Assembly (NCBI RefSeq): GCF_963921235.1
Contig: NC_086100.1
Span: 178,498,001-178,562,000, forward strand
Length of the DNA stretch: 64,000 bases
Direction: 5' to 3'
Source: Mobula hypostoma
Taxonomy: Eukaryota
Shown here: positions 7,968 to 57,538 of the stretch, in pieces
How the letters are laid out: each line of letters begins with the position of its first letter
Position numbering within the stretch: the stretch's first letter is position 1
Made by a program: the position numbers and the translations under genes
Notes under the pieces: model-generated
Database searches by the model: none
What the model was told of the DNA's origin: nothing
Seen by the model: only the letters and a program-made list of their open reading frames with translations

Positions 7968-8259
7968 CTGAACAAAATGCACAAAAGTAAGTTAAAGTAT
8001 TTTGTCACTATAATTACAGTACAAACTTTATCTGATGTTGATACTGAGCTGTCAGGCAAAGCAGCAGGAAGGGTTGGGCTAGATCTCCCATAGCAATATG
8101 TTGCCAATTAATACAGTCCAGATTGATGAGGAAGTGGGTGAAGAATGTGTCATCTTTCTGCAACAAGAAAGAGACAAAAAGAGATCACAGATTGGCACCC
8201 TTGACTGCTATATCCAATTCAACTAACTAAGCAGCTGGTCGATTGTACTGTCTACCTTC

Positions 8260-26694: not shown

Positions 26695-29181
26695 TCAACC
26701 CAGTGAATTGTAGAGCTTCTGATGCAGGTAGGCTATTTTCTCAGAGCGAGTTCTTTTAAGTAATGGGACCCACTCCCAATAAGGAAGCTCTGTGACGACA
26801 TAGCCTGCTCGTACCAGCTGCCTCCTCTTCATACTGTGCAATCCCAGAAGGATGTGGGAACTGTGGCAGTAGTGATTACGGTTAGATACCTGAATGGCAA
26901 GTTTTCTGATTTCTGATTTCTGAGCAGCATTTTGGTTTGCAATCTTTGAGTTAGTCAATGAACTTAGGAGACTGTCTGTAAGGGAAACATCATTTCTAAA
27001 TAGTTTTAGATTCAAACCTACGTGGCTTCTTTCTTTGACGTCTTCAGTTTTGTGCAAATCTTTAACAAACCCATCTTCTCTCACGCACAAACTGTCAGAG
27101 TCACTTTTTAAACTGGATCTGCCGGTGCTGCCTTTGGCAAGTTGGGAAATTAGCTCATCAGTGACCTGAACACTATTGAACTTCAGCTCAAGTTTTTTCA
27201 AGTCCTTGTTTGTTGCTTCTGTGTTGAATGGCAGTGGCTCACCACTGGGGTCAAAGTGCACCTCAAGGTCAGCTGACCTGGTATGCGGCAAAATCAGATG
27301 TTTCTTTACAAACTGAGGGCCACCAAGCATGACTTGCAGCAGAGTGGCAGCTTCAACCATCTCTGGCTTCACACAAATATCCTGCCTGGCAAAATTCCAG
27401 AGCATTTCTGTGACTTCCTGTCGTAATTGCAAGGGGAGACGGTGACCTGTGTAATCGGGGCACTCAATTGCCACCGTTCCATCAAGTGTAAAGAGATCTT
27501 TCTTCAGCTCAAATGGACTCCCATCGATCGCCAACTTAATAAAATATGGACTCAAAGCAACATTGATCAGGTTGTGAGGGAAGCGCTGACTAAACGCCAG
27601 TGCCAACAAAGCAGTGAGAAAATGCTCTGGGAAACGCTGATATTCATGTGTTTTAAGGTGCAACTGCTCAGTTAAGCTGGAAAAAAATTCAGTAGCATTT
27701 TCAGGCTCATAGTTCAAGGCCGAAAAGGACCAGAGGTATTTAGCAACGTCTTTGCTCCTACAGTACTGTACCTTTGAAGGCACCTTGGCAGCAACAGAAT
27801 CCAGGAGACGAGTGTCTCGATAGCGCAACGATGCACATGCCAACACAATATGCATTACCCCCTGAGTGCCAATTTTAGGAATCCGTTCAGGTGCTACCTC
27901 CCCTAGACGCTCCAAGAAAGGCATGTGGCTCACATGTGTGTAGCGGAACATCTTCAACACGTTCACCAAGCTATAATTGCTAATGTCTTCCATTTTTGCA
28001 GCAACCTTGTCACCAATTCTCCTCATCAGCTGCTCAGAAAATCCATTTTTTGACTTGAAGAAACCCAAGCAGGAAGCTCCAATCTCCTCCAGGTTCATCT
28101 GGTCCAGGTAATTGGACAGCAGCAGTTCCAGTTTCTGCATGAGATCTGCAGGGGCTCGGCGGCTTTCCCCAATGATGTAAAGGAGCTGAACTAGTTGGGG
28201 CATAGTCAGCTCTTTCCAACGCAAGCCCACGTAGCTCAGGACTAGTTCCATGTACCGTGGCACACTGTACCCAAGGCAGCGCCACATGTCGGCTACGTAC
28301 AAGAGCTGATTAAACTCCATGTCCCACACACGGCGGCAGAACTCAGCGCTGAGGGGCTTCAGCAACGCGTGGGAAGGGGGCAGCTGAAGGCGGACCATGG
28401 CCTTGAGAAATTGGAAAAGCTGAGGCAAAGTGAATGCGTCCAGGCTGTCGATGCTGTACTGGCAAAGCATTCCAAACCGGAAATCAGCCTTCAGAAGCAC
28501 GTGTTGCTCAGCTGGCAACCAGCTGAGGTGCCAGGCATAGTCAGATATAATCTCTGGGGTCAGGCTGCTTTTCAAGATTGAAACGTTAGAGAGAATCTTC
28601 TGCTCCTCTTTCACAGTGAGTTCCTCTCTCTGCTCGGAGCTGCAAAAACAAAGGCCCTTGTAGGCACTTCCAATTTTCTGGAATCCTCGAGGGTCTTCTT
28701 TTGTATCATAGACCTCCACAATGTCTAACTCCGCTTTTTCCTTTGAAGTCATGGTCCGCCAGGTATCGCTATGCTGGTCTTCACTGGGCTTGCTATAAGC
28801 CAGCTCCAGCAATGTGTTCCTGATGCTGGACAGTCGGCGAGAACAAGTCACCATGTAAGTGTTACATACTTGCTTGATTCTTACATTGGATGGAACATGC
28901 TCCAGGAAAAATGGTAAAGCATTTCTGTCATCCTTCGTCTCATTGGAAGCATTCTGCTGTGCCTGGATTTTAGTACTAGCATATGCTGCAGGACAGGAAT
29001 ATATTTTATAGTCTGTGCCAGACAAAAAGAGATTGGTCCTGTCAAACCTTACACCTGGCTTGTTGTTGTCATCCTCTTTCTTCTCTTCAAGTCTTGCCAC
29101 TTCAGTGCATCGAATGGTCTTTGAATATGTTCGCCAGTTACAGATTCTTCTGGGAAGCTTCCAGGAGTTGACCGTAGCCAT
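26695..29181 (-). CDS. FASTKD5: FAST kinase domain-containing protein 5, mitochondrial (828 aa, single coding exon, nested in UBOX5 intron 1)
   Basis: Long intact ORF with helical repeats, CRSKDVAKYLWSF, LPHTRSADLEV and a C-terminal RAP domain (KLAIQVSNRNHYC...MKRRQL...ELPYWEW); splice acceptor ctgcctttttttcag| ending at 29219; conserved position inside UBOX5. Confidence 0.96.
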   Translation of the reverse strand: MATVNSWKLPRRICNWRTYSKTIRCTEVARLEEKKEDDNNKPGVRFDRTNLFLSGTDYKIYSCPAAYASTKIQAQQNASNETKDDRNALPFFLEHVPSNVRIKQVCNTYMVTCSRRLSSIRNTLLELAYSKPSEDQHSDTWRTMTSKEKAELDIVEVYDTKEDPRGFQKIGSAYKGLCFCSSEQREELTVKEEQKILSNVSILKSSLTPEIISDYAWHLSWLPAEQHVLLKADFRFGMLCQYSIDSLDAFTLPQLFQFLKAMVRLQLPPSHALLKPLSAEFCRRVWDMEFNQLLYVADMWRCLGYSVPRYMELVLSYVGLRWKELTMPQLVQLLYIIGESRRAPADLMQKLELLLSNYLDQMNLEEIGASCLGFFKSKNGFSEQLMRRIGDKVAAKMEDISNYSLVNVLKMFRYTHVSHMPFLERLGEVAPERIPKIGTQGVMHIVLACASLRYRDTRLLDSVAAKVPSKVQYCRSKDVAKYLWSFSALNYEPENATEFFSSLTEQLHLKTHEYQRFPEHFLTALLALAFSQRFPHNLINVALSPYFIKLAIDGSPFELKKDLFTLDGTVAIECPDYTGHRLPLQLRQEVTEMLWNFARQDICVKPEMVEAATLLQVMLGGPQFVKKHLILPHTRSADLEVHFDPSGEPLPFNTEATNKDLKKLELKFNSVQVTDELISQLAKGSTGRSSLKSDSDSLCVREDGFVKDLHKTEDVKERSHVGLNLKLFRNDVSLTDSLLSSLTNSKIANQNAAQKSEIRKLAIQVSNRNHYCHSSHILLGLHSMKRRQLVRAGYVVTELPYWEWVPLLKRTRSEKIAYLHQKLYNSLG

Positions 29182-34700: not shown

Positions 34701-34745
34701 CGTTTCTCCCCTAATTGATTCCTTCTCGAATATCTTCATGATTTA

Positions 34746-38975: not shown

Positions 38976-40113
38976 TAGACCAGCATGAGAGTTCTATTTG
39001 GCCTCTAACCTCTCTTTGAAGAAAGAACTTGGTCACAAAGCTCCCAAATTTAGCTTAAATCATGTGAGCTAGTGAACCATTAATCTATTCTTGTCATTAA
39101 CAAAAAAAAAGAGAATGGTAATTTTCTCATTTCCATTTCTCTAACAACCAAGTCCTACACTTTCTTTTTCATAATCGGACCGAAAACCCAAACATCACCA
39201 TTTTTTCCTTCAGTTTGATTTATAGAATCATAGAAACATAGAAAACCTACAGCACAATACAGGCCCTTCGGCCCACGATGCTGTGCCGAACATGTACTTA
39301 CTTTAGAAATTACCTAGTGTTACCCATAGCCCTCTATTTATCTAAGCACCGTGTATCATGAATGAATGAATATTAAGAATGGATTTGAGCCAAAGATCAG
39401 GCATGCTCTTATTGAGTGATGATGGTACACAGTTGAGAGCTCAATAGCCTGTTCCTGATCCTATTTCCTACATTCACAAGCTGACTTTTGGAACAGAGTT
39501 ATCCCCAACTTGAGTTTTTTTTCTTTTTGATAAGCAGTGAAAAGAGTGTTTTGGATGCATTGCTCTAGACTCCTTTGGAAATGCATTTCACTGGTCTGGT
39601 GGCTGTGGTATATTGGTTGTTCTGACTGAAAGGCAAATCCAGCAGCTTCACCCAAAGTTAATGTTGTACCTTTCATTCACTCTGCTGTGGTTCTTCACAT
39701 TGGGATTTTGTTATCGTGAACAACATTATTCTGAAACTTTCAAAGTCTTTGAAACTCTTTCGATGTTCAGTCCCACTTCCTACTTAATTATTTCGTGATA
39801 CTTTTAGCCCCAAAGACTTTTTTCTAAATCACAGTAATTTGAACTATTAATTTTCACTTTACCCTTGATTATGATGACCTTTATGCATTAAAGTACAAAA
39901 GTAATGCTTAATTGGAAAATGATATTCTGATTGGAATTATGCGTTGAATAAATTAAGTACTTATAAAATTAAAATGTTGAGGTTATGGAGTGACCTCAGG
40001 TGAATTGTGAGTAGTACAGTTTGAGAATTCATTATAATAGTTTAGAAAATATAATCAGAATTCAACAAATTAGCGAAGTTAATAAATTCCGGCGCACTGA
40101 ACATTTTCGTGGG

Positions 40114-40121
40114 TATAAAAA
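40114..40121 (+). promoter_or_regulatory. TATA box of the oxytocin-family gene
   Basis: TATAAAAA starting 78 nt upstream of the ATG in non-repetitive sequence. Confidence 0.75.
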
Positions 40122-40191
40122 GAGAGCAGACGGGAAGTTGCTCAGAACAGTTTGGAAGGCTTCCTGTGTCCAGATACACCAGGAGAACATC

Positions 40192-40311
40192 ATGCAGTCT
40201 ACTTGCCTCATCGTTGCACTCCTCTGTTTCATCTCCTTCTCTTCAGCTTGCTACATCAACAACTGCCCCATTGGAGGCAAAAGATCCGTCCTGGACATGG
40301 AGATCAGACAG
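40192..40311 (+). CDS. OXT: Oxytocin-family prepro-hormone, coding exon 1 (signal peptide, nonapeptide CYINNCPIG, GKR, start of neurophysin)
   Basis: ATG at 40192; MQSTCLIVALLCFISFSSA-CYINNCPIG-GKR-SVLDMEIRQ followed by donor CAG|GTAAGG. A 40-codon phase-0 exon as in vertebrate OXT/AVP genes; neutral residue at position 8. Confidence 0.96.
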
Positions 40312-40789
40312 GTAAGGAGTAAATTTCTTCACATCTTTGATAATAATGCCTTGTAAGGGAAAAACACCTTTATTTTTCAAAAGACTTTTTTACATTGGAA
40401 AACCAGTGCAAATATTGAAATTTCTCTTGACTTGAAGATCATACAGGGTTCTTTTCATGTTCCACAGAGATTAATTCAGATGGTTCTTAAGCAAGTGTGG
40501 TTTCTAACCAGGTGGTCTGTGTTGTAAGAATCAGTGATCTGACCTTCTTTCGTAAAGACACTGAATTCAAACCCTCCCATCAAAACCCGTGGCTTCAGTG
40601 TGTCATTGAAAATGATACTTGACACTCCAAACAGAGAGGAAGAGTTTTTTGCAATTCCATAAAATTATTAATTCTAAAATTATCTTATGGAAACTTACTA
40701 AATAATTCTGAGAAAGGTAGAAGTTTCAGTGCTCGGTTATGTCTAACCAAAGTGCAGGGTGATGTAATTGGAATAAATGTACATAATTC

Positions 40790-41330
40790 ACAACCACTGA
40801 CATCGAGCTGGGGGTTCACTTTAAGAGGCTGCTCTGACATGATGGTGGTACTACATAAAGATTTGCTGGCACATTTTTGGTGTTTAGGTGTTGGAGTTCA
40901 ATAAAATGTGCTGTGGGTTCAATAAAACATAAAATGCCTCATTTTGTTTTATTTGTTAAACCTACATTGGTGACCCAATGCGTTAGAACGATTCCAGAGT
41001 TATTGAACATGTTGCCCAACACAGTTGCTTTGAAACTGCTGGAGTTTTGTGAGCAAAATGCTGTCACTTGGTTTCTACAAGAAATCACAGCCGATGACAT
41101 CAAATTCTACTACACGGTGGAGTCCCTCAGCAACCCCATGGCTGTGAGATTGTTAAGTGAGCTTGAACACAATAAGTACTGATGGCTGAAAACTCAACTT
41201 TTATAGACTTTTGGGCTATCGGAGCTTGAGTGCGCCAAACAGTTGCTCCCCTTGCCTAGCTTTGGCAATACGAGGCCCTTGGAGCTAATAGACCACAAGC
41301 TGTCTCTCCTTGGAAATCAGAATTGTTGTT
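40790..41330 (+). mobile_element. Old Gypsy element 5' part (LTR remnant, PBS, gag start)
   Basis: LTR ends ...cctaCA at 40966 followed by TGGTGACCC; gag-like VALKLLEFCEQNAVTWF; a matching LTR remnant recurs at ~49600-49682. Confidence 0.55.
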
Positions 41331-41337
41331 TTATTTT

Positions 41338-44300
41338 TCTTTCTTTCTTTTTAAATCTTTTTATTAATTTTCCAAAATTATAAACAGAATAACAATATTA
41401 ATACAGAGAGATTGGAATAATCATATTGTCGATAAGCATGTACAAAAAAAGATTTCAAATAGTACAAGTATAATAGTCTTCCAAACTCTTAATATAATTA
41501 ATCATAGAGAAAAAAAGAAAAAAAACAAAGAAAACCCCCCAAAAAAACAAACAAAAAACTAAATGCTAAACCCAAAAAAGAAAGCAAATGAAACAAAACA
41601 AAGCTAGACCATTATCTTAAATTGAACACGTCCAGTAATGTCGTCAACTCTGCTCATATATTTTAAGTTAATAAGAAGGATTCAGAAAGGTCAAATTACA
41701 TCGTATGAAAATGTTGAATAAATGGTTTCCAAGTCTTTTCAAATTTAACCGAAGGATCAAAAATGTCACTTCTGATTTTTTCTAAATTTAAACATGATAT
41801 AGTTTGGGAAAACCATTGAAATGTGGTAGGAGGATTGTTCTCTTTCCAGTTCAATAAAATGGATCTTCTTGCCATTAAAGTAACAAATGCAATCATCCGA
41901 CAGGCTGAAGAGGATAAAAATCTATGTTCTGCCATTGACGAACCGAAAATTGCCGTAATAGGATGGGGTTGTAAATCAAAACGCAAAACTGTTGAGATAA
42001 TATCAAAAATATCTTTCCAAAAGAGGACAGGACCAAAACATATGAGTTAAAGAAGCCACCTCAGAGTGACATCTGTCACAAATAGGGTTTATATGGGAAT
42101 AAAAATGGGCTAATTTATCTTTATACATATGGGCCCTATGCACTACTTTAAATTGTATTAGCGTATGTTTGGCACATATAGAGGAGGAACTAACTAATTG
42201 AAAATTTTTATCCCATTTCTCTATAGGTAGGCAAAGTTAAAGTTCCCTTTCCCATTAATTTTTAATTTTATCAGATATACCTGGCTGTAATTTCATAATT
42301 ATATCATAAATAGATGCTATTAATCCCTTCCGAAAAGGATTTAAACCTAAAATTTTATCGATGATCTCAGTAGGGTATGAGATTGGGAAGGTAGGCAGCA
42401 TGGTATTTAAAAAGTTTCTTATTTGTAAATATCTTAAAAAAAGATAGGATCTGGGCAAATTAAATTTATTAGATAACTGTTCAAAAGACACGAAACAGTT
42501 ATCCAGAAATAAGTCACAAAAACATGTTATACCTTTCATTTTCCATATCAAAAAGGCATGATCCATAACTGAGGGTTGAAAAAAATTTAGATATAATAGA
42601 GCTTGATAATATAAATTTGTTCAAACCAAAAAATTTACGAAATTGAAACCATATTCGTAATGTATGTTTAATTATTGGATTAACCATTTGTTTATTCAAT
42701 TTAGATAGTACAAAAGGAAGAGAAGTTCCTAAAATGGAAGCCAAAGAGAACCCTTGTGCAAAGTAGCCTTCAAGGTTTACCCAATGTCGACTTGGAATTA
42801 TATTCCAATTTTGTGTCCAAAATATTAATTGCCCAATAATAGAATCTTAGATTAGGCAATGCTAAACCACCATCTTTCTTGGACTTCTGTAAATATTTTT
42901 TACTTAACCTGGGATTTTTGTTCTGCCATATATAGAGGAAATTTTAGAATCAGTAGTATCAAAAAAAAAGATTTAGGAATAAAAATTGGTATAGCTTGAA
43001 ATAAATATAAAAATTTAGGTAAAATAATAATTTTAATAGCATTAATTCGGCCAATTTGTGATAGAGACAATGGGGACCACTTAGTAATCAGTTGTTTAAC
43101 CTGACTAATTAACGGTAAAAGGTTGAGCTTGAATAAATCCTTATGTCTCTTAGCAATTTTAACTTCCAAATAAGTAAAATAGTCAGTAATCAGTCTGAAT
43201 GGAGAACATCTATAAATGGGAGCCTGCATATTTAATGGAAGAAGTTCACTTTTACCTAGATTCAATTTGTAACCAGAAAAACTAATGAACTGAGCAAGCA
43301 GAGTTAATACTGCCGGAATAGAGTCCCCCAGGTTAGAAATATATAATAGTAGATCATCTGCATATAGTGATAATTTATGTGCCTCATTTCCACGGGTAAT
43401 ACCAAATATATTAGGGGAGTCACGATTAACAATAGCTAGCGGTTCCAAGGCAATGTCGAATAGTAGTCGACTAAGAGGGCAACCCTGCCTAGTACCACAG
43501 AATAATTGAAAGAGGGGAGATCTTTGATTATTAGTAAATACCGAAGCCAATGGAGTAAGATATATCAATTTAATCCAAGATATAAAATTCCGACTAAAAT
43601 TAAATTTCTCAAGCGCATTAAACAAATATGTCAATTCAACTCTATCAAAGGCTTTCCCAGCGTCCAATGAAATGACACATTCTGGAGTTCTGGGTGAAGG
43701 GGTATAAACAATATTCATTAATCTCCTAATATTAAAGGCAGAGTAACGATTTTTAATAAATCCAGTCTGATCAGCAGAAATAATTTGAGGTAATACATTC
43801 TCCAATCTCATTGCCAATATTTTAGAAAAAATCTTAGAATCTACATTCAACGAAGATATAGGCCTATAAGATGCACATTCTATAGGATCCTTATCTTTTT
43901 TAAGAATTAGGGAAATAGAAGCTCGATAAAAAGATTGTGGTAATTTACCTATAGATACCTAAAAATTCTACATAGCCAAGGAGTCAGTGTAGTAGGGAAA
44001 AATTTAAAAAATTCTGCTGTATATCCGTCTGGGCCAGGTGCTTTACCTGAGTTCATCGAAAGAATAGCATTTTTTATTTCTTCTACCGTAGTAGGTACAT
44101 CTAGTTATAAACGTTCATTGGATGATAATTTTGGAATATACAATTTCTTTAAAAAATCATGCATTATAGTGGAGTCATCAGGAAATTCTGATTGATATAG
44201 GGAGGTATAAAATTCTTGAAAAGATTTATTTATCTCATCATGGTCAACTGTCAGAGTACCATCTTTTTTACGTATCTTGCTTAACTGAAGCCGATTTTAA

Positions 44301-45326
44301 TTGATTAGCCAATAGTTTCACAGTTTTATCACCATGTATATAGAATTGACTCTTAGTTTTAATTAATTGACTTACAATCAAAGATGATAGCAATAGACTA
44401 TGTTCCATTTGGAGTTCAAATTGCTCTTTGTAAAGCTCCTGATTAGGAGCTATAGAATATTTCTTGTCAATTTCTTTGATCTTGTCAACCAGTTTACGTA
44501 TTTCATTATTAGTTCGCTTTTTTAATCCAGCATTATATGAAATAATTTGTCCATGAATGTATGCTTTAAAAGTATCCCATAGTGTCCCACTGGAAATTCC
44601 CTCTGTAAAATTCGTTGTAAAGAAAAAATTAATCTGTTCCTCAATAAACTTAACAAAATTCAAATCTTGAGGCAAAGTGGTATTAAATCGCTTTTGTCTA
44701 GAACTAGAAGATGTATCCCTTGACTTAATAGATAGTCTCAACGGCGCATGATCGGAAACAAAAATGGAATCATATTTGCAGTCAATAACAAGTCGAGAGT
44801 CAATAAGAAAATAATCAATTCTTGAATAGTGATGATATACATGTGAAAAAAATGAGAACACTTTCTCGTTGGGATGCAAGAATCTCCAAATTTCTGAGAT
44901 TCCAGAGTCAGTCATAAAAGAGTTAATAGGAGTAGTCAATTTATTCGGAAGTACTTGATTGGACATGGATCTATCCATCAAGGGATTTAAACAACAGTTA
45001 AAATCTCCGCCCATAACCAACATATAATCATTTAAATTAGGAAGAGATGTAAAGAGATTCTTAAAAAACTTGGGACAATTGACATTTGGGGCATAAACAT
45101 TAAGCATAACAACTTTTTTCTTAAATAGCAAACCAGTAATTAACAAAAATCTACCATTCAGATCTGAAACCGTCTCATGATGTAAAAATGAAATTGATGG
45201 ATCTATAAAAATATAAACACCTTTTACTTTGGCCTGTGAATTCGAGTGGTACTATTATACCTTCCAGAACCTAAAAAAATACTGATTATCCTCTTTCCAG
45301 ACATGAGTTTCTTGTACAAAGATAAT
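41338..45326 (-). mobile_element. L1-clade LINE ORF2 (APE, RT, C-terminal domain), frameshifted
   Basis: IIFVQETH, NVYAPN, GGDFN, SRIDY, SDH; DQTGF, KAFDRV, GTRQGCPLS, LYADD; A-rich 3' tail at the left end. Confidence 0.9.
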
Positions 45327-46204
45327 CATAGTCATAGTCATACTTTATTAATCCCAGAGGAAATTGTTTTTCGTTACAGTTGCACCATAAATAATAAATA
45401 GTAATAGAACCATAAATAGTTAAATAGTGATATGTAAATTATGCCAGTAAATTATGAAATAAATCCAGGACCAGCCTATTGGCTCAGGGTGTCTGACCCT
45501 CCAAGGGAGGAGTTGTAAAGTTTGATGGCCACAGGCAGGAATGACTTCCTATGACGCTCTGTGCTGCATCTCGGTGGAATGAGTCTTTGGCTGAATGTAC
45601 TCCTGTGCCCACCCAGTACATTATGTAGTAGATGGGAGACATTGACCAAGATGGCATGCAACTTAGACAACATCATCTTTTCAGACACCACCGTGAGAGA
45701 GTCCAGTTCCATCCCCACAACATCACTGGCCTTACGAATGAGTTTGTTGATTCTGTTGGTGTCTGCTACCCTCAGCCTGCTGCCCCAGCACACAACAGCA
45801 AACATGATAGCACTGGCCACCACAGACTCATGGAACATCCTCAGCATCGTCCGGCAGATGTTAAAGGACCTTAGTCTCCTCAGGAAATAGAGACGGCTCT
45901 GACCTTTCTTGTAGACAGCCTCAGTGTTCTTTGACCAGTCCAGTTTATTGTCAATTCGTATCCCCAGGTATTTGTAATCCTCCACCATGTCCACACTGAC
46001 CCCCTGGATGGAAACAGGGGTCACCGGTACCTTAGCTCTCCTCAAGTCTACCACCAGCTCCTTAGTCTTTTTCACATTAAGCTGCAGATAATTCTGCTCA
46101 CACCATGTGACAAAGTTTCCTGCCGTAGCCCTGTACACAGCCTCATCTCCCTTGCTGATGCATCCAACTATGGCAGAGTCATCTGAAAACTTCTGAAGAT
46201 GACA
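45327..46204 (-). mobile_element. Rex1/Babar LINE 3' part with uninterrupted reading frame
   Basis: CHLQKFSDDSAIVGCI...LQLNVKKTKELVVD...GQSRLYFLRRLRSF...SFLPVAIKLYN; (TATGAC)n tail. Confidence 0.85.
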
Positions 46205-46928
46205 CCTGTAGTGAGGCAACCAGAACTGAGTACAGTACTCCAACTGGGGTCTGACCAGGGTCCCATATAGCTGCAACATTACCTCTCGGTTCCTAAACTC
46301 AACCCCACAATTGTTGAAGGCCAATGCACCGTATGCCTTCTTAACCACAGAGTCAACCTGTGTAGCAGCTTTGAGTGTCCAATGGACTAGGACCCCAAGA
46401 TCCCTCTGATCCTCCACACTGCCAGGTGTCTTACCATTAATACTATATTCTGCTAACATACTTGACCTACAAAAATGAACTACCTCATACTTATTTGGGT
46501 TGAACTCCATCTGCCACTTCTCAGCCCAGTTTTGCATTCTATCAATTTCCCACTGTAACCTCTGACAGCTGTCCACACTATCCACAACACCTCCAACCTT
46601 TGTGTCATTAGCATATTTACTAACTGATCCCTCCACTTCCTCATCCAGGTCATTGATAAAAATCACAAAGAGTAGGGGTCCCAGAACAGATCCCTGAGGC
46701 ACACCAATGGTCACCGTCCTCCAAGCAGAATATGACCTTTCTACAACCACTCTTTGCCTTCTGTGGGCAAGCCAGTTCTGGATCCACAAAGCAATGTCCC
46801 CTTGGATCCCATGCCTCCTTACTTTCTCAATAAGCCTTGCATGGTGTACCTTATCAAATGCCTTATTGAAATCCATATACACTACATCTACTGCTCTACG
46901 TTCATCAATGTGTTTAGTCACATCCTCA
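46205..46928 (-). mobile_element. CR1 RT fragment
   Basis: [40 protein letters not shown]. Confidence 0.88.
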
Positions 46929-46929
46929 A

Positions 46930-48080
46930 AATATTCTTTTTTTTTCCTTTTTCAATATTTTTATTAATTTCTACATAAAGAATACAGTACATATTATAAG
47001 TAAAAAAAGATAAAATAATACCAATACATATTTGAATCACACTTGCAACCTCATTACTCTACATTCATGTAAATTAAATTAAATCAAAATGTTGAAATAT
47101 GATAATATTATTATTACATAGAAAAAAAATCTAAAACCACTACCAAGATTAAAGCTGCTTGGTAAAGAAAGAAAGAAGGAAAAAAATCCTTATCATATAG
47201 TGAAATATGTTATTAACCAACACCTGTACTTTAACAACAAATCAATGATTTTGAAAATAGTTCAAAAATGGTCCCCACAATGTGTGAAAGTCTTGGCTAG
47301 GTTCAGAAATTGAACAACGGATCTTTTCTAAATTTAAACATAACATAATATCACGTAACCATGAAGTGTGAGTAGGCGGGATGACATCCTTCCATTTAAG
47401 CAAGAGCGTCCTCCTAGCTATAAGAGAAATAAAAGACAGAATGTGCAAATCAGATGTCTCCAGAATAATATATTTTTCTCCAACAATACCGAATAAAGCA
47501 GTCAAAGGGTTAGGCTTAAAATTTACTTTGAAAAGTACAGAGAAAGTTTGAAATATTTCCTTCCAGCATTTCCCGAGACTCGGACAGGTCCAAAACATAT
47601 GAATTAGTGAAGCTTCTACATTATTACATCTATCACGAAAGGGAGATATATCCGAATAAAAATGAGATAGCTTATCCTTGCTCATGTGGGCCCTATGGAC
47701 CACTTTAAATTGTAACAGGGAGTGGCAGACACAGATCGATGAAGAGTTAACCAATTTTTTAAAAAAAATTTTATTCCAAGTTTCCTCAGAAATTGAAGTC
47801 TGTAAATCTTGTTCCCAAAGATCTTTAATTTTGTCTAATGGGACATTTCTCATTCCCAGCAACATACCGTAAATATTAGATACTGAAACATTATGAAAAG
47901 GTTTCAAATTAAAAATTACATCTAATAAGTTCTTATCAGGACTTTTAGGAAATGTATATAATTGAGATCGCAGAAAGTCTCTAATTTGTAGATATCGCAA
48001 ACAGTGGGTTTTTGGCAGGCTATACTTAGCTGACAATTGCTCAAACGAGAAGAGACTTCCTCCACAAACAAAACCTGGAA
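46930..48080 (-). mobile_element. Second L1-clade 3' fragment
   Basis: YLQIRDF, QFKVVHR, C..HMFWTC, LNLEKI; A-rich tail. Confidence 0.8.
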
Positions 48081-48084
48081 GCAT

Positions 48085-49599
48085 GTAGACCACAGAAGTA
48101 GCAAAGGAGTTCTGTGTCTTTATGGATCTCACTCTGTCAGCAGCTGGCCCCCTCAGACATTCAACCATTCACTGTCTTTACATCATCAGAGCCCTGCCAC
48201 TCATCCAGCATCTGAGAAGTCTCTCCACCCAAGTCTCAGACTCCTCTTCCCTCTTGGGCGTGGGCTTCACTCCTGAGAACAATCTCAGCTTTCGATAGCT
48301 AGGAATCCCCACCTGTTCACTTTGCCATTTATTCGTCAGGAAGGTAAGGACTGATACCAACTCAGAATTCTCACTCTTTGCTGGAGGACTTGTTGGATGT
48401 TCCAAAGCAGACCACCACTTCCCCTCGCTAGGCACAAAGGAGAATAACCTGCCTTTGAAGTCCCTGCCCCCAGCTACGGGAGACTTGGCCTCTGATTTTG
48501 CACACTCGCCTACACTCTCCTCCTCTGGGAAAGTATGGACAACACACGGCACCCCACCCACCTCCCGAGGCCTCAGTAGTACCAGGCAGTTCCACTGCCA
48601 TTCTGTCAGTGCTAGTCTGAACTAAAACAACACCTTTGCCCATCATTCTATCAAACCTCTGTTCCACAATAGTAACTGCTCCTACTGATTTAACAGTACT
48701 TAAAGTTTGAATTAACAATTTGCTGGGAATACGAATGTCTACACCACTCAATGCACATGCATTCGTTACCGGTAACCCCATGGATTCGCACCTCCGCTCA
48801 ACCCTGTACAACATCCGTAACCACGTATCATAATCACTTTACCGAACAATAGTTTAACACAGGCTTAAACACACAACTCACTGGATCAATGCTCAGGGCA
48901 ATCACACAGCATCCAACGAAATCAATCCCAAATGATACCGCCACAATGAAATCCCCTGGTTTCCTGGGCTGCGTAAGTCTAGGGAAAACACTCTCCAGTC
49001 CCGCCAAACTCGTGGGATTGAGACAGCTGTCCAGCCCCAAACCCCGGTTTGTGTGGCTGCTGTGTAATTTGCTACCCTGTTACAAATTAGTGCCATGAAA
49101 TAACAGACAGCACCCTGCATACCATTAAAGGAATTATATTTATGAATCTTAACTTAACTAAAGGGTTAGTAAAGAAAAAACAAAAAGAAAAGGGCCCATT
49201 TTAATTGAACAGTCAAATATGCACAAATTGGAGCTCATCTTGAACTTCTCTGTCACACATGCACTGGGCCCTCGGTCAGCTGGAAAGCACACATCACCTT
49301 CCGATTGTCACTCGCAATCCATCTCGAACAAACATGTCCCCCACCGGGTCGCAACCTACGACCAGTTCTCCCCAGTGTCTTCTCTCTTCATCTCCAGCAG
49401 AACCTAAAAAACCTCCAAGACCAACCTTAGAGCCCCACACCAAGAAAACCTCCCCCTAATTGGGTGGCTCTCATTGCACATATTCCTTATCTTTAACAAA
49501 TAACCCAGAAAAGGCTGAAAGCAGAACAGACTGCTCTTACAGAACTGCTAAATGAAATACCTATAACAGAACAGTAAAGATGTGAACCAGGGCATTACA
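48085..49599 (-). mobile_element. Truncated Gypsy element: 5' LTR (49599-48947), PBS, PNMA-like gag start
   Basis: TGTAATGCCCTGG...GATTTCA then TGGCGGTATC; same LTR family as the solo LTR at 8260-8877; ORF 48428-48814 resembles a PNMA-type gag N-terminus. Confidence 0.75.
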
Positions 49600-49949
49600 G
49601 TAGGGTTTGGAATTCAATAAAATGTGTTTCAGGTTTCATTAAATATAAAACCCCTCACTTCATTTTATTTATGAAAAGCTATAAAAGTATCTGGAATAGA
49701 TTGGAATGAAATTCTATTTCTGAGATAGTTTAATGGTAGCTTGTGTGTAACTGGAAGCTGTCTGGTCGAAGAGTCAATAACTGAGAGGGATAATTTATAG
49801 GAACAGGCGATATTGATCAAATGGATAAACTGACCTAAAGAGTCGAAGTGGTATTAATCATCGCTCAACTGGAAGATGAATTTTCATAAGAGTTGGCTTT
49901 TAGTATATTCTAAAATGATCAAAATTTCATTTAACTTGTTCTTCTAAAA

Positions 49950-50945
49950 ATAGAACATAACATTTCGGAGCAGATTTAGGCCATTTGGCCGATTGGATCC
50001 ACTCCACAGTTTCATCACAGCAGATCCAACTTTCTCTCAATCCCAATCTCCTGCTTTCTCCCCGTATCCCTTCATGTCCTGACCAATCAAGAATCAATCA
50101 ACCTCTGCATTAAATATACATAAAGACTTAGTCTCTACAGCTGCTTGTGGCAGAGAATTCCACAGATGCACCACACTCTGGTTAAAGAAATTCCTCCTCA
50201 TCTCTGTTTGAAGAGGCCGCCCCTCTATTCTGAGAATGTGTCTTCTCGTTTTAGATACTCCCACAATAGGAAACATCCTCTCCCTATCCACTCTATCAAG
50301 GCTTTTTACCATGCAACGTGTTTCAGGGAGATCACCCCTCATTCTTCTGAATTCCGGTGAAAACAGGCTCGGGGCCATTACAAGCTCTTCATACGACAAG
50401 CCGTTCAACCTTGGATTCACAAAAAAATCTCACAAAAGTTAGTTGATTTGGCCCAGTGTATCACAGATAAAGCCCTCCCAACCATTAAGCTTATTGGCAT
50501 GAAACATAGACATAGAAATGCAGTATCCATTATCAAAGATCCTCACCACCCAGGCCATGCTCTTTTCTCACTGCTGCTGTTAGGTAGGAGGTATAAAGTG
50601 CCTCAGGACACGCACCAGCAGGTTCAGGAACAATTACTACCTCTCAGCCATCAGACTCTTGAGCAAAAGTGATGACTACGCTCATTCATTTTCTGATGTA
50701 CCCACAACCAATGGTCTCATTTTAAGGACTCTATCTTGTAATTTCATGTCCTTCCATTTCATGTTATTTCATACTTGTTATTTATTGCTATTTATTTATA
50801 TTAGCATTTGCACAGTTTGTTGTGCATTGATCCTGTTTACAGTTACTATTCTATAGATTTGCTAAGTATACCTGTAGGAAAATGAATATCAGGGTTGTAT
50901 GTGGTGACATGTCTGTACTCTGATAATAAATTTTACTTTGAAATT
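49950..50945. mobile_element. CR1 3' fragment (minus, ~49950-50420) and Rex1/Babar 3' fragment (plus, ~50445-50945)
   Basis: RRMRGDL..LWNSLP; SIIKDPHHPGHALFSLL. Confidence 0.75.
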
Positions 50946-51709
50946 TGAGAAAGTACAGGGTTAGTGTGAATGAGTACTTGATGGCTAGTACGGACTCATT
51001 GTGTCAAAGGGCCCGTTTCCAAGCTCTATGGTTCAAAAACTCTGTAAAACACTTCTCGTAAATTTAATCAGTGTCGCCAACATACAGAAATGGTGCGACA
51101 AGACTGACTGCAAATGTGGCGAATCTGGATCAAGAACTACAAACTGCTGGAGGAACTCAGCAAGTCGAGCGGCATCCGCGGATGCAAAAAGATCTCAACC
51201 CAACACTCCAGCTATCTCTTTGCCTCAGACGATGTTGCTCGACCTGCTGAGTTCCTCCAGAAATTTGTTCTGTTTTTCATAACAAAAAAGATTTTCTTTC
51301 AAACTCAGTAATACTGTAAGACAGTAGTCTTTTCATCGAGCAGAAGGTTCAAATGCCTGAAAGTACAGACCACAAAGCTCACAAACTGCTTCTATCCCAT
51401 TCTTATAGATTCACTTTATTTGTCACACGTACATCAAAACATCGAATCATACAGTGAAGTGCATGACAATAATGAACCAATTTACCAAGAATTGTTTATA
51501 ATTTGGAGTAAGACACAAATGCTGGAGGGCCAAGACTCTTTATCAGTTAATTCTTTATTCCTCTCGGTAGTTGCTGCCTGACCTGCTGAGTTGCCGGAGC
51601 ATTTTGTGTCTGTTACTCTGGATTTTGAGAATCTGCAGAATCTCTTGCGTTTGTGAACGGTCTTTGGGAGTGGCCTTGCTGATTCAATCTATTCTCTGCT
51701 CTTTCCCAG

Positions 51710-51914
51710 TGTATGCCATGTGGTCCTGGCAATCGGGGCCAATGCTTTGGAAACAACATTTGCTGTGGGGAGGAGATTGGTTGCTACTTCGGAACTTCTG
51801 AGACAGTGCGGTGCCAGAAGGAAGTCTACCTGCCCTCACCCTGTGAACCCTCAGGCAGGGTCTGTGGCAGGAATGGCGGAAAATGTGCCACATCAGGAAT
51901 CTGCTGCACTTCTG
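51710..51914 (+). CDS. OXT: Oxytocin-family precursor, coding exon 2 (neurophysin core)
   Basis: Acceptor ttctctgctctttcccag| then CMPCGPGNRGQCFGNNICCGEEIGCYFGTSETVRCQKEVYLPSPCEPSGRVCGRNGGKCATSGICCTS; donor G|GTGAGA; phase 0 in, phase 1 out. Confidence 0.95.
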
Positions 51915-52064
51915 GTGAGAGGCTCACCCTTTATCACACACTGTTTCAAAGAACATGACAATTTCAAAACAATCTTAGCTGTCAAGTTGAAAGGAATGTA
52001 TGGTCAATTTTGTCCTACAGGTCAATCATGCTACAGATATAGCTGGGAATCGATTATATTAGAA

Positions 52065-55000
52065 CATAGAACATAGAACAGTACAGCACAATACAGGCTC
52101 TTCAGCCCATGATGTTGTGCTGACATTTTAACCTATGGAGGAGTTAGGGGAGTTCCTCAATGAATAATTTGCTTCAGTATTCATCAGTGAAGGGGACCTT
52201 GTTGAATGTGAGTTCAGCGTAGAACAGGCTGATTTGCTGGAACATGGTGATGCTCAGAAAGAGTATGTGCTGGAAGTACTGAGAATTTTATGATAGCTAA
52301 CTCCCTGGAATAAGACAGGATATACCCCAGGTTAGCATGGGAAGTGATGGAAAAGATTGTTGTGTCTTTGGCAGTGTTCTTGTCTTCATCAGCGGCTACA
52401 GGTACAGTACCAGAAGATTGGACTGTGGCAAATGTTATTCCTTTGTACAAGAAAAGTAATGGGGATAATACAGGGAATCATAGACCAGTGAGCCTTATGT
52501 CAGTGGTGCGCAAACTATTAGAGAGGATGATTAGAGACAGCTGATGAGAATTTGGAGAAGCATAATCTGATTACGGATAGTCAACATGGCTTTGTGAAGG
52601 GCAGCTCATACCTCACAGATCTGATCGATCTTTTTGATGAAGTGATAACACAAATTGATGAAGGTACAGCATTGGATATGGTGCAGAATTTTAGCAAAGC
52701 ATTTGACACGGTTCCCCATGGTAGGCTTGTTCAGAAAGTTTGGCGGCATGTGATCCAGGGTTACTTGGCTGCATGAAATGCTTGTAAATCCTGTCTCTAA
52801 GAATCTTCTCCAGATCTTTATCCTCAGTGGTCCATCATTCCTAGGTCCCTCCCTGTTACCTGTCCTGAACAAAGCAATAACAATTGTAACCCTGCAGTTT
52901 TCCAAAATCATCACCAATTGCAGAGCAATCTCTTCCTACAGCAACATAAGTGGCCCCCAGGAACTTAACTATCCAAATGATTTTCAAACGTTGGAAAACA
53001 CCCTCTTTCTTAATTTCAACACGTTCCCGCATGTTAGTCTGTTCCACACTGATCTCACAGTTATCAGGGTCCATCTCACTGGTAAATATTGAAAGGCCTG
53101 GACAGAGCATATAGAGTGTATAGAGTGGATGTGGAGAGAATGTTTTCAATAGTAGGGGAGTCTAGGACCAGAGGGCACAGCCTTAGAATACAAAGTTGTC
53201 CCTTTAGAACAGAGATAAGGAGGATTTTTTTTTTTAGCCATAAAGAGGGTGATGAATCTGTGGAATTCACTTCAACAGACAGCTCTGGAGAGTAAGTCTG
53301 GTAGAGTGGTGGAAACAGAGTCACTGCCAGTATTTACAAAGCATCCAGATGAGAACTTGAATTGCCGAGACAGAGGAGGCTACACGTCAGGTGATGGAAG
53401 ATGGGATAACACAGAAGGGTCAGTGTGGATGAGTTGGGCCAAATGGCCGACTTCCATGCTATATGACTCTGTGACTAGTCACATAATGGATAGATAAGTC
53501 ATCTGTTGGCCATGGCACTGACCCAGTACCAGGGCTATCTGAACAAGTACATGGATAAGAGTCAAAATTCATATTGAAAAGTCAAAAATCAAAGTTAAGT
53601 TTATTATCAAATTATGTATATGTCATCATACACCACCCTGAGATTCATTTTCTTGCAGGCATTTAAAGGAAAATAAAGAAATACATCAGAATTAATGGAA
53701 ATCTATACATAAACATCAACTGATGTGCAAAATAATTTCCCTATTGAAGATTTTGCAGGGGCTGTGAACTGGAGCCCCAGGTCAGTAAGGGAAGGATCAG
53801 ATCAGAAGGTAGATCTCAGGGAAAGCATTGAAAGGGAAAATCGAAATAGCAGGTATGATGGGTCGGATAGTTTGAAGTGTGCATATTTCAATTCTAGGCA
53901 TATTAAGGGTCAGGGTGATGAACTGAGACCATGCATCAGTACATGAAACTACAATATTGTAGAAATTACTGAAACTTGGTTGAGAGAGGGGCAGGAGTGG
54001 GTGATTAATGTACCAGGTTTTTGAAGTTTTAGAAAAGATAGAGGAGAAGGAAAAGGGGAGGAGTGGTTAGTTGCACTACTATTCAGAGAAAATATCACAG
54101 CTGCACTTAGATGAGACATAATGGAGGGGTGAGACACTGAGTTCATTTGGAGGAAACTCAGGACTAAGAAGGGTGCAATCATGTTGATGGGACTGTACGA
54201 CGTACCCCTAATCACCACTGGGACACTGAGGAACAGATGATATAATCAGATTAAAGAAAGGCATAAAAATAATAGGGTTGTTGTCATGGGGGATTTCAAC
54301 TTACCTGAAGACACACACACAGCAATTCAGGAACAGCTTCTTCCTCTCTGCTATCCAATTCCTAAATGGACATTGAACCTATGAACACTAATTCACTTGC
54401 ACGATCTTTAATCTATTCAATATGCGTATACTGTAATTGATTTACTTACTTTTTTCCTTCTTCTTCTTCGTCTATATTATGTATTGCATTGAACTGCTGC
54501 TGCTAAGTTAATAAATTTCACGACACGTGCTGGTGATAATACTCCTGATTCTGATAAACTGGGACATGTTTTATGTAGGGGATTGAGATGGGGCAGAATT
54601 TGTTAAGTGTATCCAGGAGGATTTTAAATCAACATGTGAATAGTCCAACAAGAAGAGGGCCAAATTGGACCTGGTTTTCATTCATGAGCTTGGCCAGATA
54701 ACAGACCTTTCTGTGGGTGAACAGTTAGAGAACAGTCTGACCACAGCACTTTAACTTAGGCCTCGTGGGAGAATTTTAAGTTGGAGTTGAGCAAATGATG
54801 AGTGTATTAGGCAGGAACTAAATGTTGATTGTGAACTCTATTTCTCTGGCAAGTCCACATCAGACATGTGGAGGGTGTTCAAAGATCAATTGCACAGAGT
54901 AGCAGAAGGGTACGTTCCTGTTAAAAGGAAGGATGGGGATGGAAAGATAAAAGAACCTTGGATGTCCAGAGAGGCGATGAATTTAGTCAAGAATAAAAAG

Positions 55001-56780: not shown

Positions 56781-57273
56781 TGTACTGTTCTATGTTCTAT
56801 CTGCTTTCAGACGATTTAAACAGAAGCTGCGTTATCTGACTAAAACTAATTTAAATCATAGCAATGTTGTCTCCTGAGACATGGAACTGGAATTATTATC
56901 CATTTTAGATTAGTGAATAATCTAATTAGTGAAATAGAACAGAGAATGCAGGAAATACTTGGCCACTTGGGCAGCAACCACAGAGAAACTACTAACACTT
57001 CAGGTCCATGTCTTTTTCCTCACAACAGGGAAAAGTGACAGTAAATGTTTGACCATAGCTCTGAGCCAGCACTGACCGCCTGGGCGAAGTGGCCTCATTT
57101 GAGATCATAAGCAATTATGAGAATGAGACCGTCTGACTTCAAATCCCAAAGTATCCTGCAGTCTCATTCTCGCAGTTCCTCCAGCTGAGTGAAGATGATG
57201 TAGTTATTGGAGATGGTTTATGATGGTGTATGTCAATTACAATAATGGCATTTGTGCTGTTCATTTATTACAG

Positions 57274-57347
57274 ACAGCTGCACCATGGATCCCACATGTG
57301 ACACCAGGAATATCTTCTCCTCAAGTTCAGGTGCACTTCTGGGTTAA
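57274..57347 (+). CDS. OXT: Oxytocin-family precursor, coding exon 3 (neurophysin C-terminus, no copeptin)
   Basis: Acceptor tcatttattacag|; the phase-1 join gives DSCTMDPTCDTRNIFSSSSGALLG* (TAA 57345-57347) and supplies the last 2 of the 14 neurophysin cysteines. Too short to appear in the ORF track. Confidence 0.9.
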
Positions 57348-57532: not shown

Positions 57533-57538
57533 AATAAA
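57533..57538 (+). terminator. Polyadenylation signal of the oxytocin-family gene
   Basis: AATAAA about 185 nt after the stop codon, followed by T-rich sequence. Confidence 0.7.

What the first reader, a model, noticed from the sequence alone, without database searches (positions are those of the whole stretch)
40249..40284. Oxytocin-family nonapeptide with an unfamiliar sequence: CYINNCPIG-NH2 ([Asn4,Ile8]-oxytocin)
Seen: codons TGC TAC ATC AAC AAC TGC CCC ATT GGA followed by GGC AAA AGA (amidation glycine and dibasic cleavage site), in an intact three-exon precursor with TATA box and poly(A) signal. Established: cartilaginous fishes have unusually varied oxytocin-type peptides, including aspargtocin CYINNCPLG, asvatocin CYINNCPVG, phasitocin CYFNNCPIG, valitocin, glumitocin and isotocin CYISNCPIG. 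This peptide matches none of those I know, yet is one nucleotide from four of them (ATT vs GTT/CTT at position 8, ATC vs TTC at position 3, AAC vs AGC at position 4). Inference: a possibly unnamed neurohypophysial hormone and a mutational intermediate in the elasmobranch nonapeptide radiation.
Basis: partly seen in the sequence, partly recalled or inferred. Interest (0 to 1): 0.9.

Follow-up and report, generated by a model that had tools for sequence, protein, structure and literature searches.

The report
Ray oxytocin-type hormone gene, unnamed peptide
This is the intact oxytocin-type hormone gene of a devil ray (Mobula hypostoma), and its predicted nine-residue hormone CYINNCPIG-amide matches no named hormone, although automatic annotation already lists the same peptide in stingrays, mantas and a sawfish, so it is a modest addition to a known family.

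Summary
Window 40249-40284 reads CYINNCPIG-GKR inside an intact three-exon neurophysin precursor of 132 aa with 14 Cys, GT/AG introns, a TATA box and AATAAA.

The window is Mobula hypostoma (identical to OY992595.1). The gene is already in RefSeq as the unnamed prediction "neurophysin 1-like", XP_062903408.1.

The same nonapeptide is predicted in M. birostris, Hypanus sabinus (two copies), Hemitrygon akajei and the sawfish Pristis pectinata. It is therefore not an assembly error and not unique to this species.

Evidence that the gene is functional:
- Ile8 uses all three Ile codons across these species.
- dN/dS against Pristis is 0.13 (p = 4e-10).
- The 250-bp promoter is 87% conserved out to Narcine.

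A neurophysin tree places the gene inside one batoid oxytocin-family clade, so it is the orthologue, not an old second paralogue.

The peptide is absent from the classical list of named hormones and from about 8.4 million searched papers. It has the most one-nucleotide neighbours (five) among 12 chondrichthyan oxytocin-type peptides, and parsimony favours it as the ancestral batoid state.

No spliced transcript was seen in three RNA runs of unknown tissue, so expression and the mature peptide remain untested.

Verdict: a real new member of a known kind, of moderate interest.

The parts
39942..40191 (+). Conserved proximal promoter and 5' UTR of the nonapeptide gene
   Evidence: Alignment of six batoid sequences (Mobula, Hypanus x2, Hemitrygon, Pristis, Narcine) gives 87% mean column identity, although dS to Pristis and Narcine is about 0.43.
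40114..40121 (+). TATA box (TATAAAAA), 71 nt upstream of the ATG
   Evidence: Read directly. GGGTATAAAAA is invariant in all six aligned batoid promoters.
40192..40311 (+). Exon 1 coding part: signal peptide, hormone, GKR and the first 9 residues of neurophysin
   Evidence: Donor GTAAGG at 40312. The same donor is found in five orthologous loci.
40192..40248 (+). Signal peptide MQSTCLIVALLCFISFSSA (19 aa). Cleavage after Ser-Ser-Ala is inferred.
   Evidence: The hormone follows directly, as in all aligned precursors.
40249..40275 (+). Nonapeptide CYINNCPIG ([Asn4,Ile8]-oxytocin, equal to [Asn4]-isotocin)
   Evidence: The same peptide is encoded with synonymous codon differences in Hypanus, Hemitrygon and Pristis.
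40276..40284 (+). Gly-Lys-Arg: amidation donor and dibasic cleavage site
   Evidence: It is conserved in all aligned precursors.
40312..51709 (+). Intron 1 (11.4 kb), filled with LINE fragments on the minus strand
   Evidence: ORFs at 42900-43850 and 45476-46921 hit RVT_1. The ORF at 44268-45146 hits the endonuclease-RT family weakly.
51710..51914 (+). Exon 2: central neurophysin domain (205 nt)
   Evidence: Pfam Hormone_5 E = 2.6e-27 on the spliced product.
51915..57273 (+). Intron 2 (5.4 kb), rich in repeats
   Evidence: Very high word depth in the DNA and RNA runs marks repeats.
57274..57347 (+). Exon 3 coding part: last two Cys of neurophysin and a short tail, with stop TAA at 57345-57347
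   Evidence: The tail is 6 residues longer than in the other batoids.
57533..57538 (+). Poly(A) signal AATAAA, 186 nt after the stop
26695..29181 (-). Neighbour gene FASTKD5 (single 828-aa ORF)
   Evidence: Pfam FAST_1, FAST_2 and RAP.
6651..7982 (-). Neighbour gene UBOX5, large 3' exon
   Evidence: Pfam DUF5918 and U-box.

Best explanation
This is the functional oxytocin-family (neutral neurohypophysial hormone) gene of the devil ray Mobula hypostoma. The 132-aa preprohormone enters the secretory pathway. The 19-residue signal peptide is removed, exposing Cys1. Prohormone convertases cut after Lys-Arg, carboxypeptidase removes the basic residues, and the remaining Gly is converted to a C-terminal amide. 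The Cys1-Cys6 disulfide closes the ring. The product is CYINNCPIG-NH2 (calculated [M+H]+ 993.43) plus a 14-Cys neurophysin carrier without copeptin. Processing steps, hypothalamic expression and receptor action are inferred from the family and were not shown here. The same peptide is the oxytocin-type hormone of stingrays and mantas (Myliobatiformes) and of a sawfish (Rhinopristiformes), and it is probably the ancestral batoid form.
For: Sequence and gene structure are intact. Pfam Hormone_5 scores E = 2.6e-27, and all 14 Cys are present. The window is 100% identical to M. hypostoma OY992595.1, and the product equals XP_062903408.1. The identical nonapeptide is found in M. birostris, Hypanus sabinus x2, Hemitrygon akajei and Pristis pectinata. 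Ile8 is ATT, ATC or ATA, with synonymous changes at Cys1, Ile3, Cys6 and Arg12. dN/dS is 0.13 against Pristis (15 nonsynonymous and 27 synonymous changes, Fisher p = 4e-10) and 0.21 against Narcine. Introns and flanks between Mobula and Hypanus are about 85-89% identical, against about 95% for the CDS. The promoter is conserved and its TATA box is invariant. The neurophysin-only tree gives a batoid oxytocin-family clade at 100/97 and a myliobatiform clade at 98/93. Among the proteins retrieved, it was the only oxytocin-type precursor of this genome; the other neurophysin protein found is vasotocin-type.
Against: There is no evidence of a mature transcript. In three RNA runs of this species there is no exon 2-exon 3 joint and zero depth over exon 3 and the 3' UTR. 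The few low-depth contigs in X5 run unspliced across both exon 2 borders and into unique intron. X6 holds none of the sampled exon-1 words. The tissues of those runs are unknown, and contigs show presence, not absence. No peptide or receptor data exist here. dN/dS within Myliobatiformes is only 0.3-0.4 on very few changes.
Confidence: 0.85

Rival explanations
1. The peptide is already a described and named hormone in literature that could not be searched (subscription journals, older biochemical papers on ray or stingray pituitaries), so nothing here is new.
For: The library holds only open-access papers and bioRxiv. The sequence has been public in RefSeq since the Pristis, Hypanus and Mobula annotations. 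Groups working on the red stingray Hemitrygon akajei exist.
Against: There are no hits for the one-letter or three-letter form in about 8.4 million texts. The 2009 table of eight cartilaginous-fish peptides lacks it, and the three later papers that name all four shark peptides did not hold the sequence string either. All database entries carry only automatic names such as 'neurophysin 1-like'.
Confidence: 0.12
2. The gene is an intact-looking but silent or redundant copy. It was displaced from the vasotocin gene by a rearrangement, and the active hormone of these rays comes from elsewhere.
For: It lies head-to-head with FASTKD5/UBOX5, not tail-to-head after the vasotocin-type gene. No spliced RNA was seen. 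M. birostris carries a decayed extra copy on another chromosome.
Against: No other oxytocin-type precursor was found for M. hypostoma. There is strong purifying selection. The promoter is conserved with an invariant TATA box. The same divergent arrangement is kept in Hypanus and Pristis. The decayed copy shows what loss of function looks like here: its ATG has become TTG and its promoter is lost.
Confidence: 0.05
3. Codons 3, 4 or 8 are an assembly or sequencing error, and the true peptide is a named one such as isotocin or asvatocin.
For: None was found.
Against: DNA runs hold 0.93-1.00 of the exon-1 words, and a second species holds 0.73-0.80. Five independent assemblies of five species encode the same nine residues with different synonymous codons.
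Confidence: 0.01

Closest known systems
Isotocin (CYISNCPIG-NH2) and its precursor in electric rays (Torpedo marmorata Q91504, Narcine bancroftii) and ray-finned fishes
   Same: Same gene family and the same batoid oxytocin-family clade. Same three-exon structure and splice sites. The precursors are 126 aa without copeptin in electric rays. Residues 1-3 and 5-9 are identical, including Ile8. The promoter is conserved with Narcine.
   Different: Position 4 is Asn (AAC) instead of Ser (AGC), a single nucleotide. In Narcine the gene has the same orientation as vasotocin, whereas here it is divergent.
Asvatocin (CYINNCPVG) and aspargtocin (CYINNCPLG) of sharks
   Same: Asn4 is shared. Eight of nine residues are identical, and each is one nucleotide away at codon 8. 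The precursors are 70-76% identical.
   Different: Position 8 is Ile, not Val or Leu. These are shark lineages (Triakis, Scyliorhinus, Squalus and many genome predictions), and the neurophysin-only tree places their precursors outside the batoid clade.
Phasitocin (CYFNNCPIG) of Triakis scyllium and Scyliorhinus torazame
   Same: Asn4 and Ile8 are shared, and it is one nucleotide away at codon 3.
   Different: It has Phe3 instead of Ile3, and it belongs to a separate, long-branched shark paralogue clade (100/100).
Glumitocin (CYISNCPQG) of skates
   Same: It is the orthologous batoid gene, found in Amblyraja and Leucoraja.
   Different: It differs at positions 4 and 8 and has no one-step link to any observed peptide.
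Mesotocin (CYIQNCPIG)
   Same: Ile8 is shared and there is a single residue difference.
   Different: Gln4 to Asn4 needs two nucleotide changes. Mesotocin is found in lungfish, coelacanth and tetrapods, and here in the Heptranchias predictions.

Membership tests
Vasopressin/oxytocin-neurophysin preprohormone family (Pfam PF00184 Hormone_5) | A signal peptide is followed directly by a nonapeptide of the form C-x-x-x-N-C-P-x-G | tested here: met
   MQSTCLIVALLCFISFSSA is followed by CYINNCPIG, aligned with 12 family members.
Vasopressin/oxytocin-neurophysin preprohormone family (Pfam PF00184 Hormone_5) | A Gly-Lys-Arg amidation and cleavage signal follows the nonapeptide | tested here: met
   GGC AAA AGA at 40276-40284.
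Vasopressin/oxytocin-neurophysin preprohormone family (Pfam PF00184 Hormone_5) | A neurophysin domain with 14 conserved cysteines | tested here: met
   Hormone_5 scores E = 2.6e-27 and 95.9 bits against a cut-off of 27.2. All 14 Cys are present in the translated product, and 13 of them sit in invariant or nearly invariant columns of the alignment.
Vasopressin/oxytocin-neurophysin preprohormone family (Pfam PF00184 Hormone_5) | Three exons with conserved intron positions (after residue 9 of neurophysin, and in phase 1 before the last Cys pair) | tested here: met
   Exons of 120 and 205 nt, the same intron positions and phases, and the same donor sequences are found in six batoid loci.
Oxytocin branch (neutral hormones) as opposed to the vasotocin branch | A neutral residue at position 8 and no copeptin extension | tested here: met
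   Ile8 is present. The precursor ends 21 residues after the last Cys, whereas the vasotocin-type precursors of the same species have a tail of about 45 residues.
Oxytocin branch (neutral hormones) as opposed to the vasotocin branch | It groups with oxytocin-family precursors in a gene tree | tested here: met
   In the neurophysin-only tree, the elasmobranch oxytocin-family set is split from the vasotocin set at 99/100, and the batoid clade has 100/97 support. Callorhinchus OT groups with its own VT, an artefact that Gwee et al. also noted.
Oxytocin branch (neutral hormones) as opposed to the vasotocin branch | Canonical locus: tail-to-head directly after the vasotocin gene, in the order UBOX5-VT-OT-GNRH2 (PMC2656470) | tested here: not met
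   The gene is linked to the vasotocin-type gene, about 126 kb away on the same chromosome, but in divergent orientation with UBOX5 and FASTKD5 in between. One inversion would explain this. Narcine keeps the same orientation as vasotocin.
Oxytocin branch (neutral hormones) as opposed to the vasotocin branch | Expressed in hypothalamic neurosecretory cells, with the amidated peptide stored in the neurohypophysis | tested here: inconclusive
   Three RNA runs of unknown tissue show no spliced transcript. No proteomic data are available.
Oxytocin branch (neutral hormones) as opposed to the vasotocin branch | Activates an oxytocin-type receptor | not testable with these tools
   This needs synthetic peptide and cloned ray receptors.
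Any already named oxytocin-family nonapeptide (oxytocin, mesotocin, isotocin, glumitocin, valitocin, aspargtocin, asvatocin, phasitocin, phasvatocin) | An identical nine-residue sequence | tested here: not met
   It differs from every entry of Table 1 in PMC2656470 by at least one residue.

The most novel reading that the evidence does not exclude
CYINNCPIG is the ancestral oxytocin-type hormone of all batoids, and possibly close to the elasmobranch ancestor. It would be the hub from which isotocin (electric rays), CYINNCPTG and glumitocin (skates), and perhaps the shark peptides asvatocin, aspargtocin and phasitocin each arose by single steps. In the lineage that kept it (sawfish plus stingrays), the locus was inverted away from vasotocin, and the vasotocin partner itself changed: CYIKNCPRG in Myliobatiformes and CFIQNCPKG in Pristis. 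That pattern suggests a co-ordinated re-tuning of the two-hormone system.
Probability: 0.4. Interest if true: 0.55.

Novelty: new member of a known kind. Interest (0 to 1): 0.38.

Why it matters
Cartilaginous fishes are the one vertebrate group in which the oxytocin-type hormone varies widely, and the reason has been debated since the work of Acher (neutral drift or a link to urea-based osmoregulation; this point is from my own knowledge). The classical list of eight peptides (PMC2656470) comes from a handful of species.

This gene adds the peptide used by the largest ray order, Myliobatiformes, which includes viviparous stingrays and mantas, and by a sawfish. It also supplies the missing central node that joins five other observed peptides by single nucleotide changes, so the order of changes can now be tested.

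It gives a defined peptide (calculated [M+H]+ 993.43) for mass spectrometry, immunoassays and receptor pharmacology in rays, where antibodies and standards for isotocin or oxytocin may not fit. If the peptide is never expressed, or has been described under a name I could not find, the finding reduces to routine annotation.

Tried and rejected
1. RNA support. It gave no splice joint and no exon 3 coverage, so it neither supports nor refutes expression.

2. The first homology search with the exon 1 region found only one cluster. The full-length search missed skates, electric rays, Pristis and Hemitrygon. Only the profile search reached them.

3. All batoid oxytocin-type genes form one supported clade, and no second oxytocin-type gene is annotated in M. 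hypostoma. A single inversion fits the gene order.

4. I rejected assembly error, because five assemblies agree.

5. I looked for FASTKD5 and UBOX5 in the 10-kb flanks of the ten other loci, to test whether the gene order is shared. There were no hits because the flanks are too short. Only orientation and distance to the vasotocin-type gene are known for the other species.

6. Two encoding-contig look-ups (M. birostris P0001 and the Hemitrygon partial model P0048) failed for lack of capacity and were not repeated.

7. Literature searches for stingray or batoid neurohypophysial hormones returned nothing relevant.

Full report
**1. Observation**

Window 40249-40284 on the plus strand reads TGC TAC ATC AAC AAC TGC CCC ATT GGA GGC AAA AGA, which translates to CYINNCPIG-GKR. 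A six-frame scan for C[YF][IF][QSNR]NCP finds this one site in 64 kb.

The gene around it is complete:
- TATAAAAA at 40114-40121 and ATG at 40192.
- Exon 1 CDS at 40192-40311: a 19-aa signal peptide, the hormone, GKR and nine residues of neurophysin, with donor GTAAGG.
- Intron 1 of 11.4 kb.
- Exon 2 at 51710-51914 (205 nt).
- Intron 2 of 5.4 kb.
- Exon 3 at 57274-57347, with stop TAA at 57345.
- AATAAA at 57533-57538.

The spliced CDS is 399 nt and 132 aa, with all 14 neurophysin cysteines. It hits Pfam Hormone_5 at E = 2.6e-27. Intron 1 carries LINE reverse-transcriptase fragments on the other strand.

My first reading of the coordinates was off by one for the ATG and by two for the end of exon 2. 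The values given here are the corrected ones.

**2. Source**

A locus fetched for the protein XP_062903408.1 is 100% identical to window 30192-64000 over 33,809 bases. That locus is Mobula hypostoma, GCA_963921235.1, OY992595.1:178528192-178565347.

The window is therefore from the lesser devil ray, order Myliobatiformes. The gene is already annotated automatically as "neurophysin 1-like", and its product is identical to my spliced translation.

**3. Distribution of the peptide**

Searching with the exon 1 part, then the full protein, then a chondrichthyan profile gave these oxytocin-family peptides (cluster members; sequences; tallies):

| Peptide | Species |
|---|---|
| CYINNCPIG | M. hypostoma, M. 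birostris (two loci), Hypanus sabinus (two genes 150 kb apart), Hemitrygon akajei, Pristis pectinata (Rhinopristiformes) |
| CYISNCPIG (isotocin) | Narcine, Torpedo |
| CYISNCPQG (glumitocin) | Amblyraja (six genes), Leucoraja |
| CYINNCPTG | Rhinoraja (Rajiformes) |
| CYINNCPVG (asvatocin) | Most sharks |
| CYINNCPLG | Scyliorhinus torazame |
| CYIQNCPIG | Heptranchias |
| CYITNCPLG | Pristiophorus |
| CYFNNCPIG and CYFNNCPVG | A separate carcharhiniform paralogue |

All entries that carry CYINNCPIG have only automatic names.

**4. Is the gene functional?**

I extracted the CDS from the loci of Hypanus (both copies), Hemitrygon, Pristis and Narcine. All have the same exon sizes and canonical splice sites.
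- Within the nonapeptide, Ile8 is ATT in Mobula, ATC in the dasyatids and ATA in Pristis.
- Cys1, Ile3, Cys6 and Arg12 also vary synonymously. The peptide has therefore been held constant while the DNA drifted.
- Nei-Gojobori dN/dS over 124 codons is 0.13 for Mobula against Pristis (27 synonymous and 15 nonsynonymous changes, one-sided Fisher p = 4e-10).
- dN/dS is 0.21 against Narcine, and 0.31-0.42 against the close dasyatids, on few changes.
- Non-coding DNA between Mobula and Hypanus is about 85-89% identical, against about 95% for the CDS.
- The 250 bp before the ATG align across all six sequences with 87% mean identity and an invariant GGGTATAAAAA. This is more than expected at dS of about 0.43.

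For contrast, the extra M. birostris copy on another chromosome is about 86% identical including its introns. It has lost the promoter homology upstream of about -60, and its ATG has become TTG.

**5. Expression**

Expression is the weak point. Two RNA runs of the species held exon 2-region words, and one of them (X6) held no exon 1 words; X5 was not listed in the exon 1 search.

Laying three RNA runs and one DNA run on 51610-57609 showed no exon 2-exon 3 joint and zero RNA depth over 56810-57609. In X5 there were only low-depth contigs that run unspliced over both borders of exon 2 and through unique intron. That pattern fits carried-over DNA or nascent RNA. The tissues are not on record, and these are assembled contigs, so this is absence of evidence only.

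**6. Orthology and locus**

I built a maximum-likelihood tree from the neurophysin part only, leaving the hormone out.
- It separates the vasotocin-type precursors from the elasmobranch oxytocin-type precursors at 99/100.
- It gives one batoid oxytocin-family clade (100/97), holding Pristis, the electric rays, the skates and a myliobatiform clade (98/93).
- The order of these four batoid lineages is unresolved.

The window gene is therefore the batoid oxytocin orthologue.

In the window, FASTKD5 (26695-29181) and the large UBOX5 exon (6651-7982) lie on the minus strand, so the hormone gene is head-to-head with them. The vasotocin-type gene of M. hypostoma lies at 178.395-178.412 Mb on the minus strand. 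That is downstream of UBOX5, as in elephant shark and human, and about 126 kb from the oxytocin-type gene (PMC2656470).

| Species | Orientation of the VT-type and OT-type genes |
|---|---|
| Mobula hypostoma | Divergent |
| Hypanus sabinus | Divergent |
| Pristis pectinata | Divergent |
| Narcine bancroftii | Same orientation, vasotocin first (the canonical tail-to-head order) |

One inversion of the VT-UBOX5-FASTKD5 block in the ancestor of Rhinopristiformes plus Myliobatiformes would produce this. That is an inference from coordinates, because the flanks were too short to see UBOX5 in the other species. Its suggestion of a second paralogue is not supported.

**7. Place in the radiation**

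I compared 12 chondrichthyan oxytocin-type peptides, 11 seen here plus valitocin from the literature.
- CYINNCPIG has the most one-nucleotide neighbours, five: asvatocin, aspargtocin, CYINNCPTG, phasitocin and isotocin.
- It also has the smallest summed distance to all the others.

The parsimony argument assumes the usual batoid tree (my knowledge): skates are sister to the rest, then electric rays, then Rhinopristiformes plus Myliobatiformes.
- Asn4 at the batoid root needs two changes (to Ser in rajid skates and in electric rays). Ser4 at the root needs three.
- Ile8 is the only state shared by three of the four batoid lineages, and it also occurs in sharks.

CYINNCPIG is therefore the most parsimonious ancestral batoid peptide. 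This is inference, not proof.

**8. Literature**

The one-letter string and the three-letter string "Ile-Asn-Asn-Cys-Pro-Ile" occur in none of about 8.1 million PMC papers and 0.36 million preprints. Table 1 of Gwee et al. 2009 lists eight cartilaginous-fish peptides without it. Theofanopoulou et al. 2021 name only valitocin, aspargtocin and glumitocin for this group. Searches on stingray, batoid and Asn4/Ile8 terms found nothing relevant. Subscription literature was not searchable.

**9. Verdict**

The gene and the peptide are real, conserved and under selection. The peptide is unnamed, but it already sits in public annotation for five species. It belongs to a well-understood family in a group known for exactly this kind of variation.

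It is a new member of a known kind. Its value lies mainly in completing the mutational network and in giving ray endocrinology its correct ligand. I score interest at about 0.38.

Noticed in passing
L005:10058-10093 (M. hypostoma OY992595.1, about 126 kb from the window gene) and L011:10058-10093 (Hypanus sabinus): The vasotocin-type precursor of Myliobatiformes encodes CYIKNCPRG ([Lys4]-vasotocin; AAG where Narcine and Pristis have CAG). It is found in M. hypostoma, M. birostris, Hemitrygon akajei and Hypanus sabinus. Among the sequences retrieved here, non-mammalian vasotocin-type precursors otherwise read CYIQNCPRG. The string occurs in no searched paper. This may be more surprising than the oxytocin-type variant.
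   Followed up: partly
L009:10058-10093 (Pristis pectinata CM019856.1): The sawfish vasotocin-type precursor (XP_051897714.1, with a copeptin-like tail) encodes CFIQNCPKG, that is Phe2 and Lys8. It is not in the searched literature.
   Followed up: partly
P0191 (Rhinoraja longicauda); P0007 and P0077 (Pristiophorus japonicus): Two further unnamed oxytocin-type peptides appear in automatic annotation: CYINNCPTG in an arhynchobatid skate and CYITNCPLG (two genes) in a sawshark. Neither string is in the searched papers.
   Followed up: partly
L002:34850-38000 (M. birostris CM057558.1, a different chromosome from its main gene): This is a decayed duplicate of the gene, about 86% identical including its introns. 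Its ATG has become TTG, the homology ends just downstream of where the TATA box should be, and intron 1 is much shorter. RefSeq models it as a 141-aa protein (XP_072110517.1) with a foreign first exon and read-through of the intron 2 donor. It still reads CYINNCPIG. Whether M. hypostoma has this copy was not checked.
   Followed up: partly
L003 and L004 (Hypanus sabinus CM057976.1, 170.607 and 170.757 Mb); cluster of P0104: There are lineage-specific copy-number changes. Hypanus has two intact same-strand copies 150 kb apart that differ by two residues (dS 0.05). Amblyraja radiata has six glumitocin precursors on one chromosome, and Leucoraja has four accessions.
   Followed up: no
window 1-57600, with loci L005, L006, L008-L011: The gene order is VT(-), UBOX5(-), FASTKD5(-), OT(+) in Mobula. 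VT and OT are also divergent in Hypanus and Pristis, but they share one orientation in Narcine. A single inversion in the ancestor of Rhinopristiformes plus Myliobatiformes would explain this.
   Followed up: partly
window 57318-57347: The Mobula precursors end ...IFSSSSGALLG (132 aa), whereas all other batoid precursors end ...IFSAN or ...IFSSD (126 aa). This is a six-residue C-terminal extension specific to Mobula.
   Followed up: no
window 51610-52863: RNA-labelled run X5 holds low-depth contigs (depth 4-8) identical to unspliced genomic sequence across both exon 2 borders and in unique intron 2, but nothing over exon 3. This looks like DNA carry-over or nascent transcripts.
   Followed up: no
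P0048 (Hemitrygon akajei XP_072897986.1, 108 aa): This is a second Hemitrygon model that has the exon 2 neurophysin core but no hormone exon and a different C-terminus. It may be a second copy, as in Hypanus, that has been mis-modelled. The look-up failed for lack of capacity.
   Followed up: no
window 34001-36000: This is the stretch richest in CpG between FASTKD5 and the hormone gene (26-35 CpG per kb, up to 50% GC). It is probably the shared UBOX5/FASTKD5 promoter.
   Followed up: no
window 21367-22158: A 263-aa ORF on the plus strand hits the GDSL-like lipase and OSK domain families, next to a reverse-transcriptase ORF at 22780-24057. It is probably part of a retroelement inside the UBOX5 region.
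   Followed up: no
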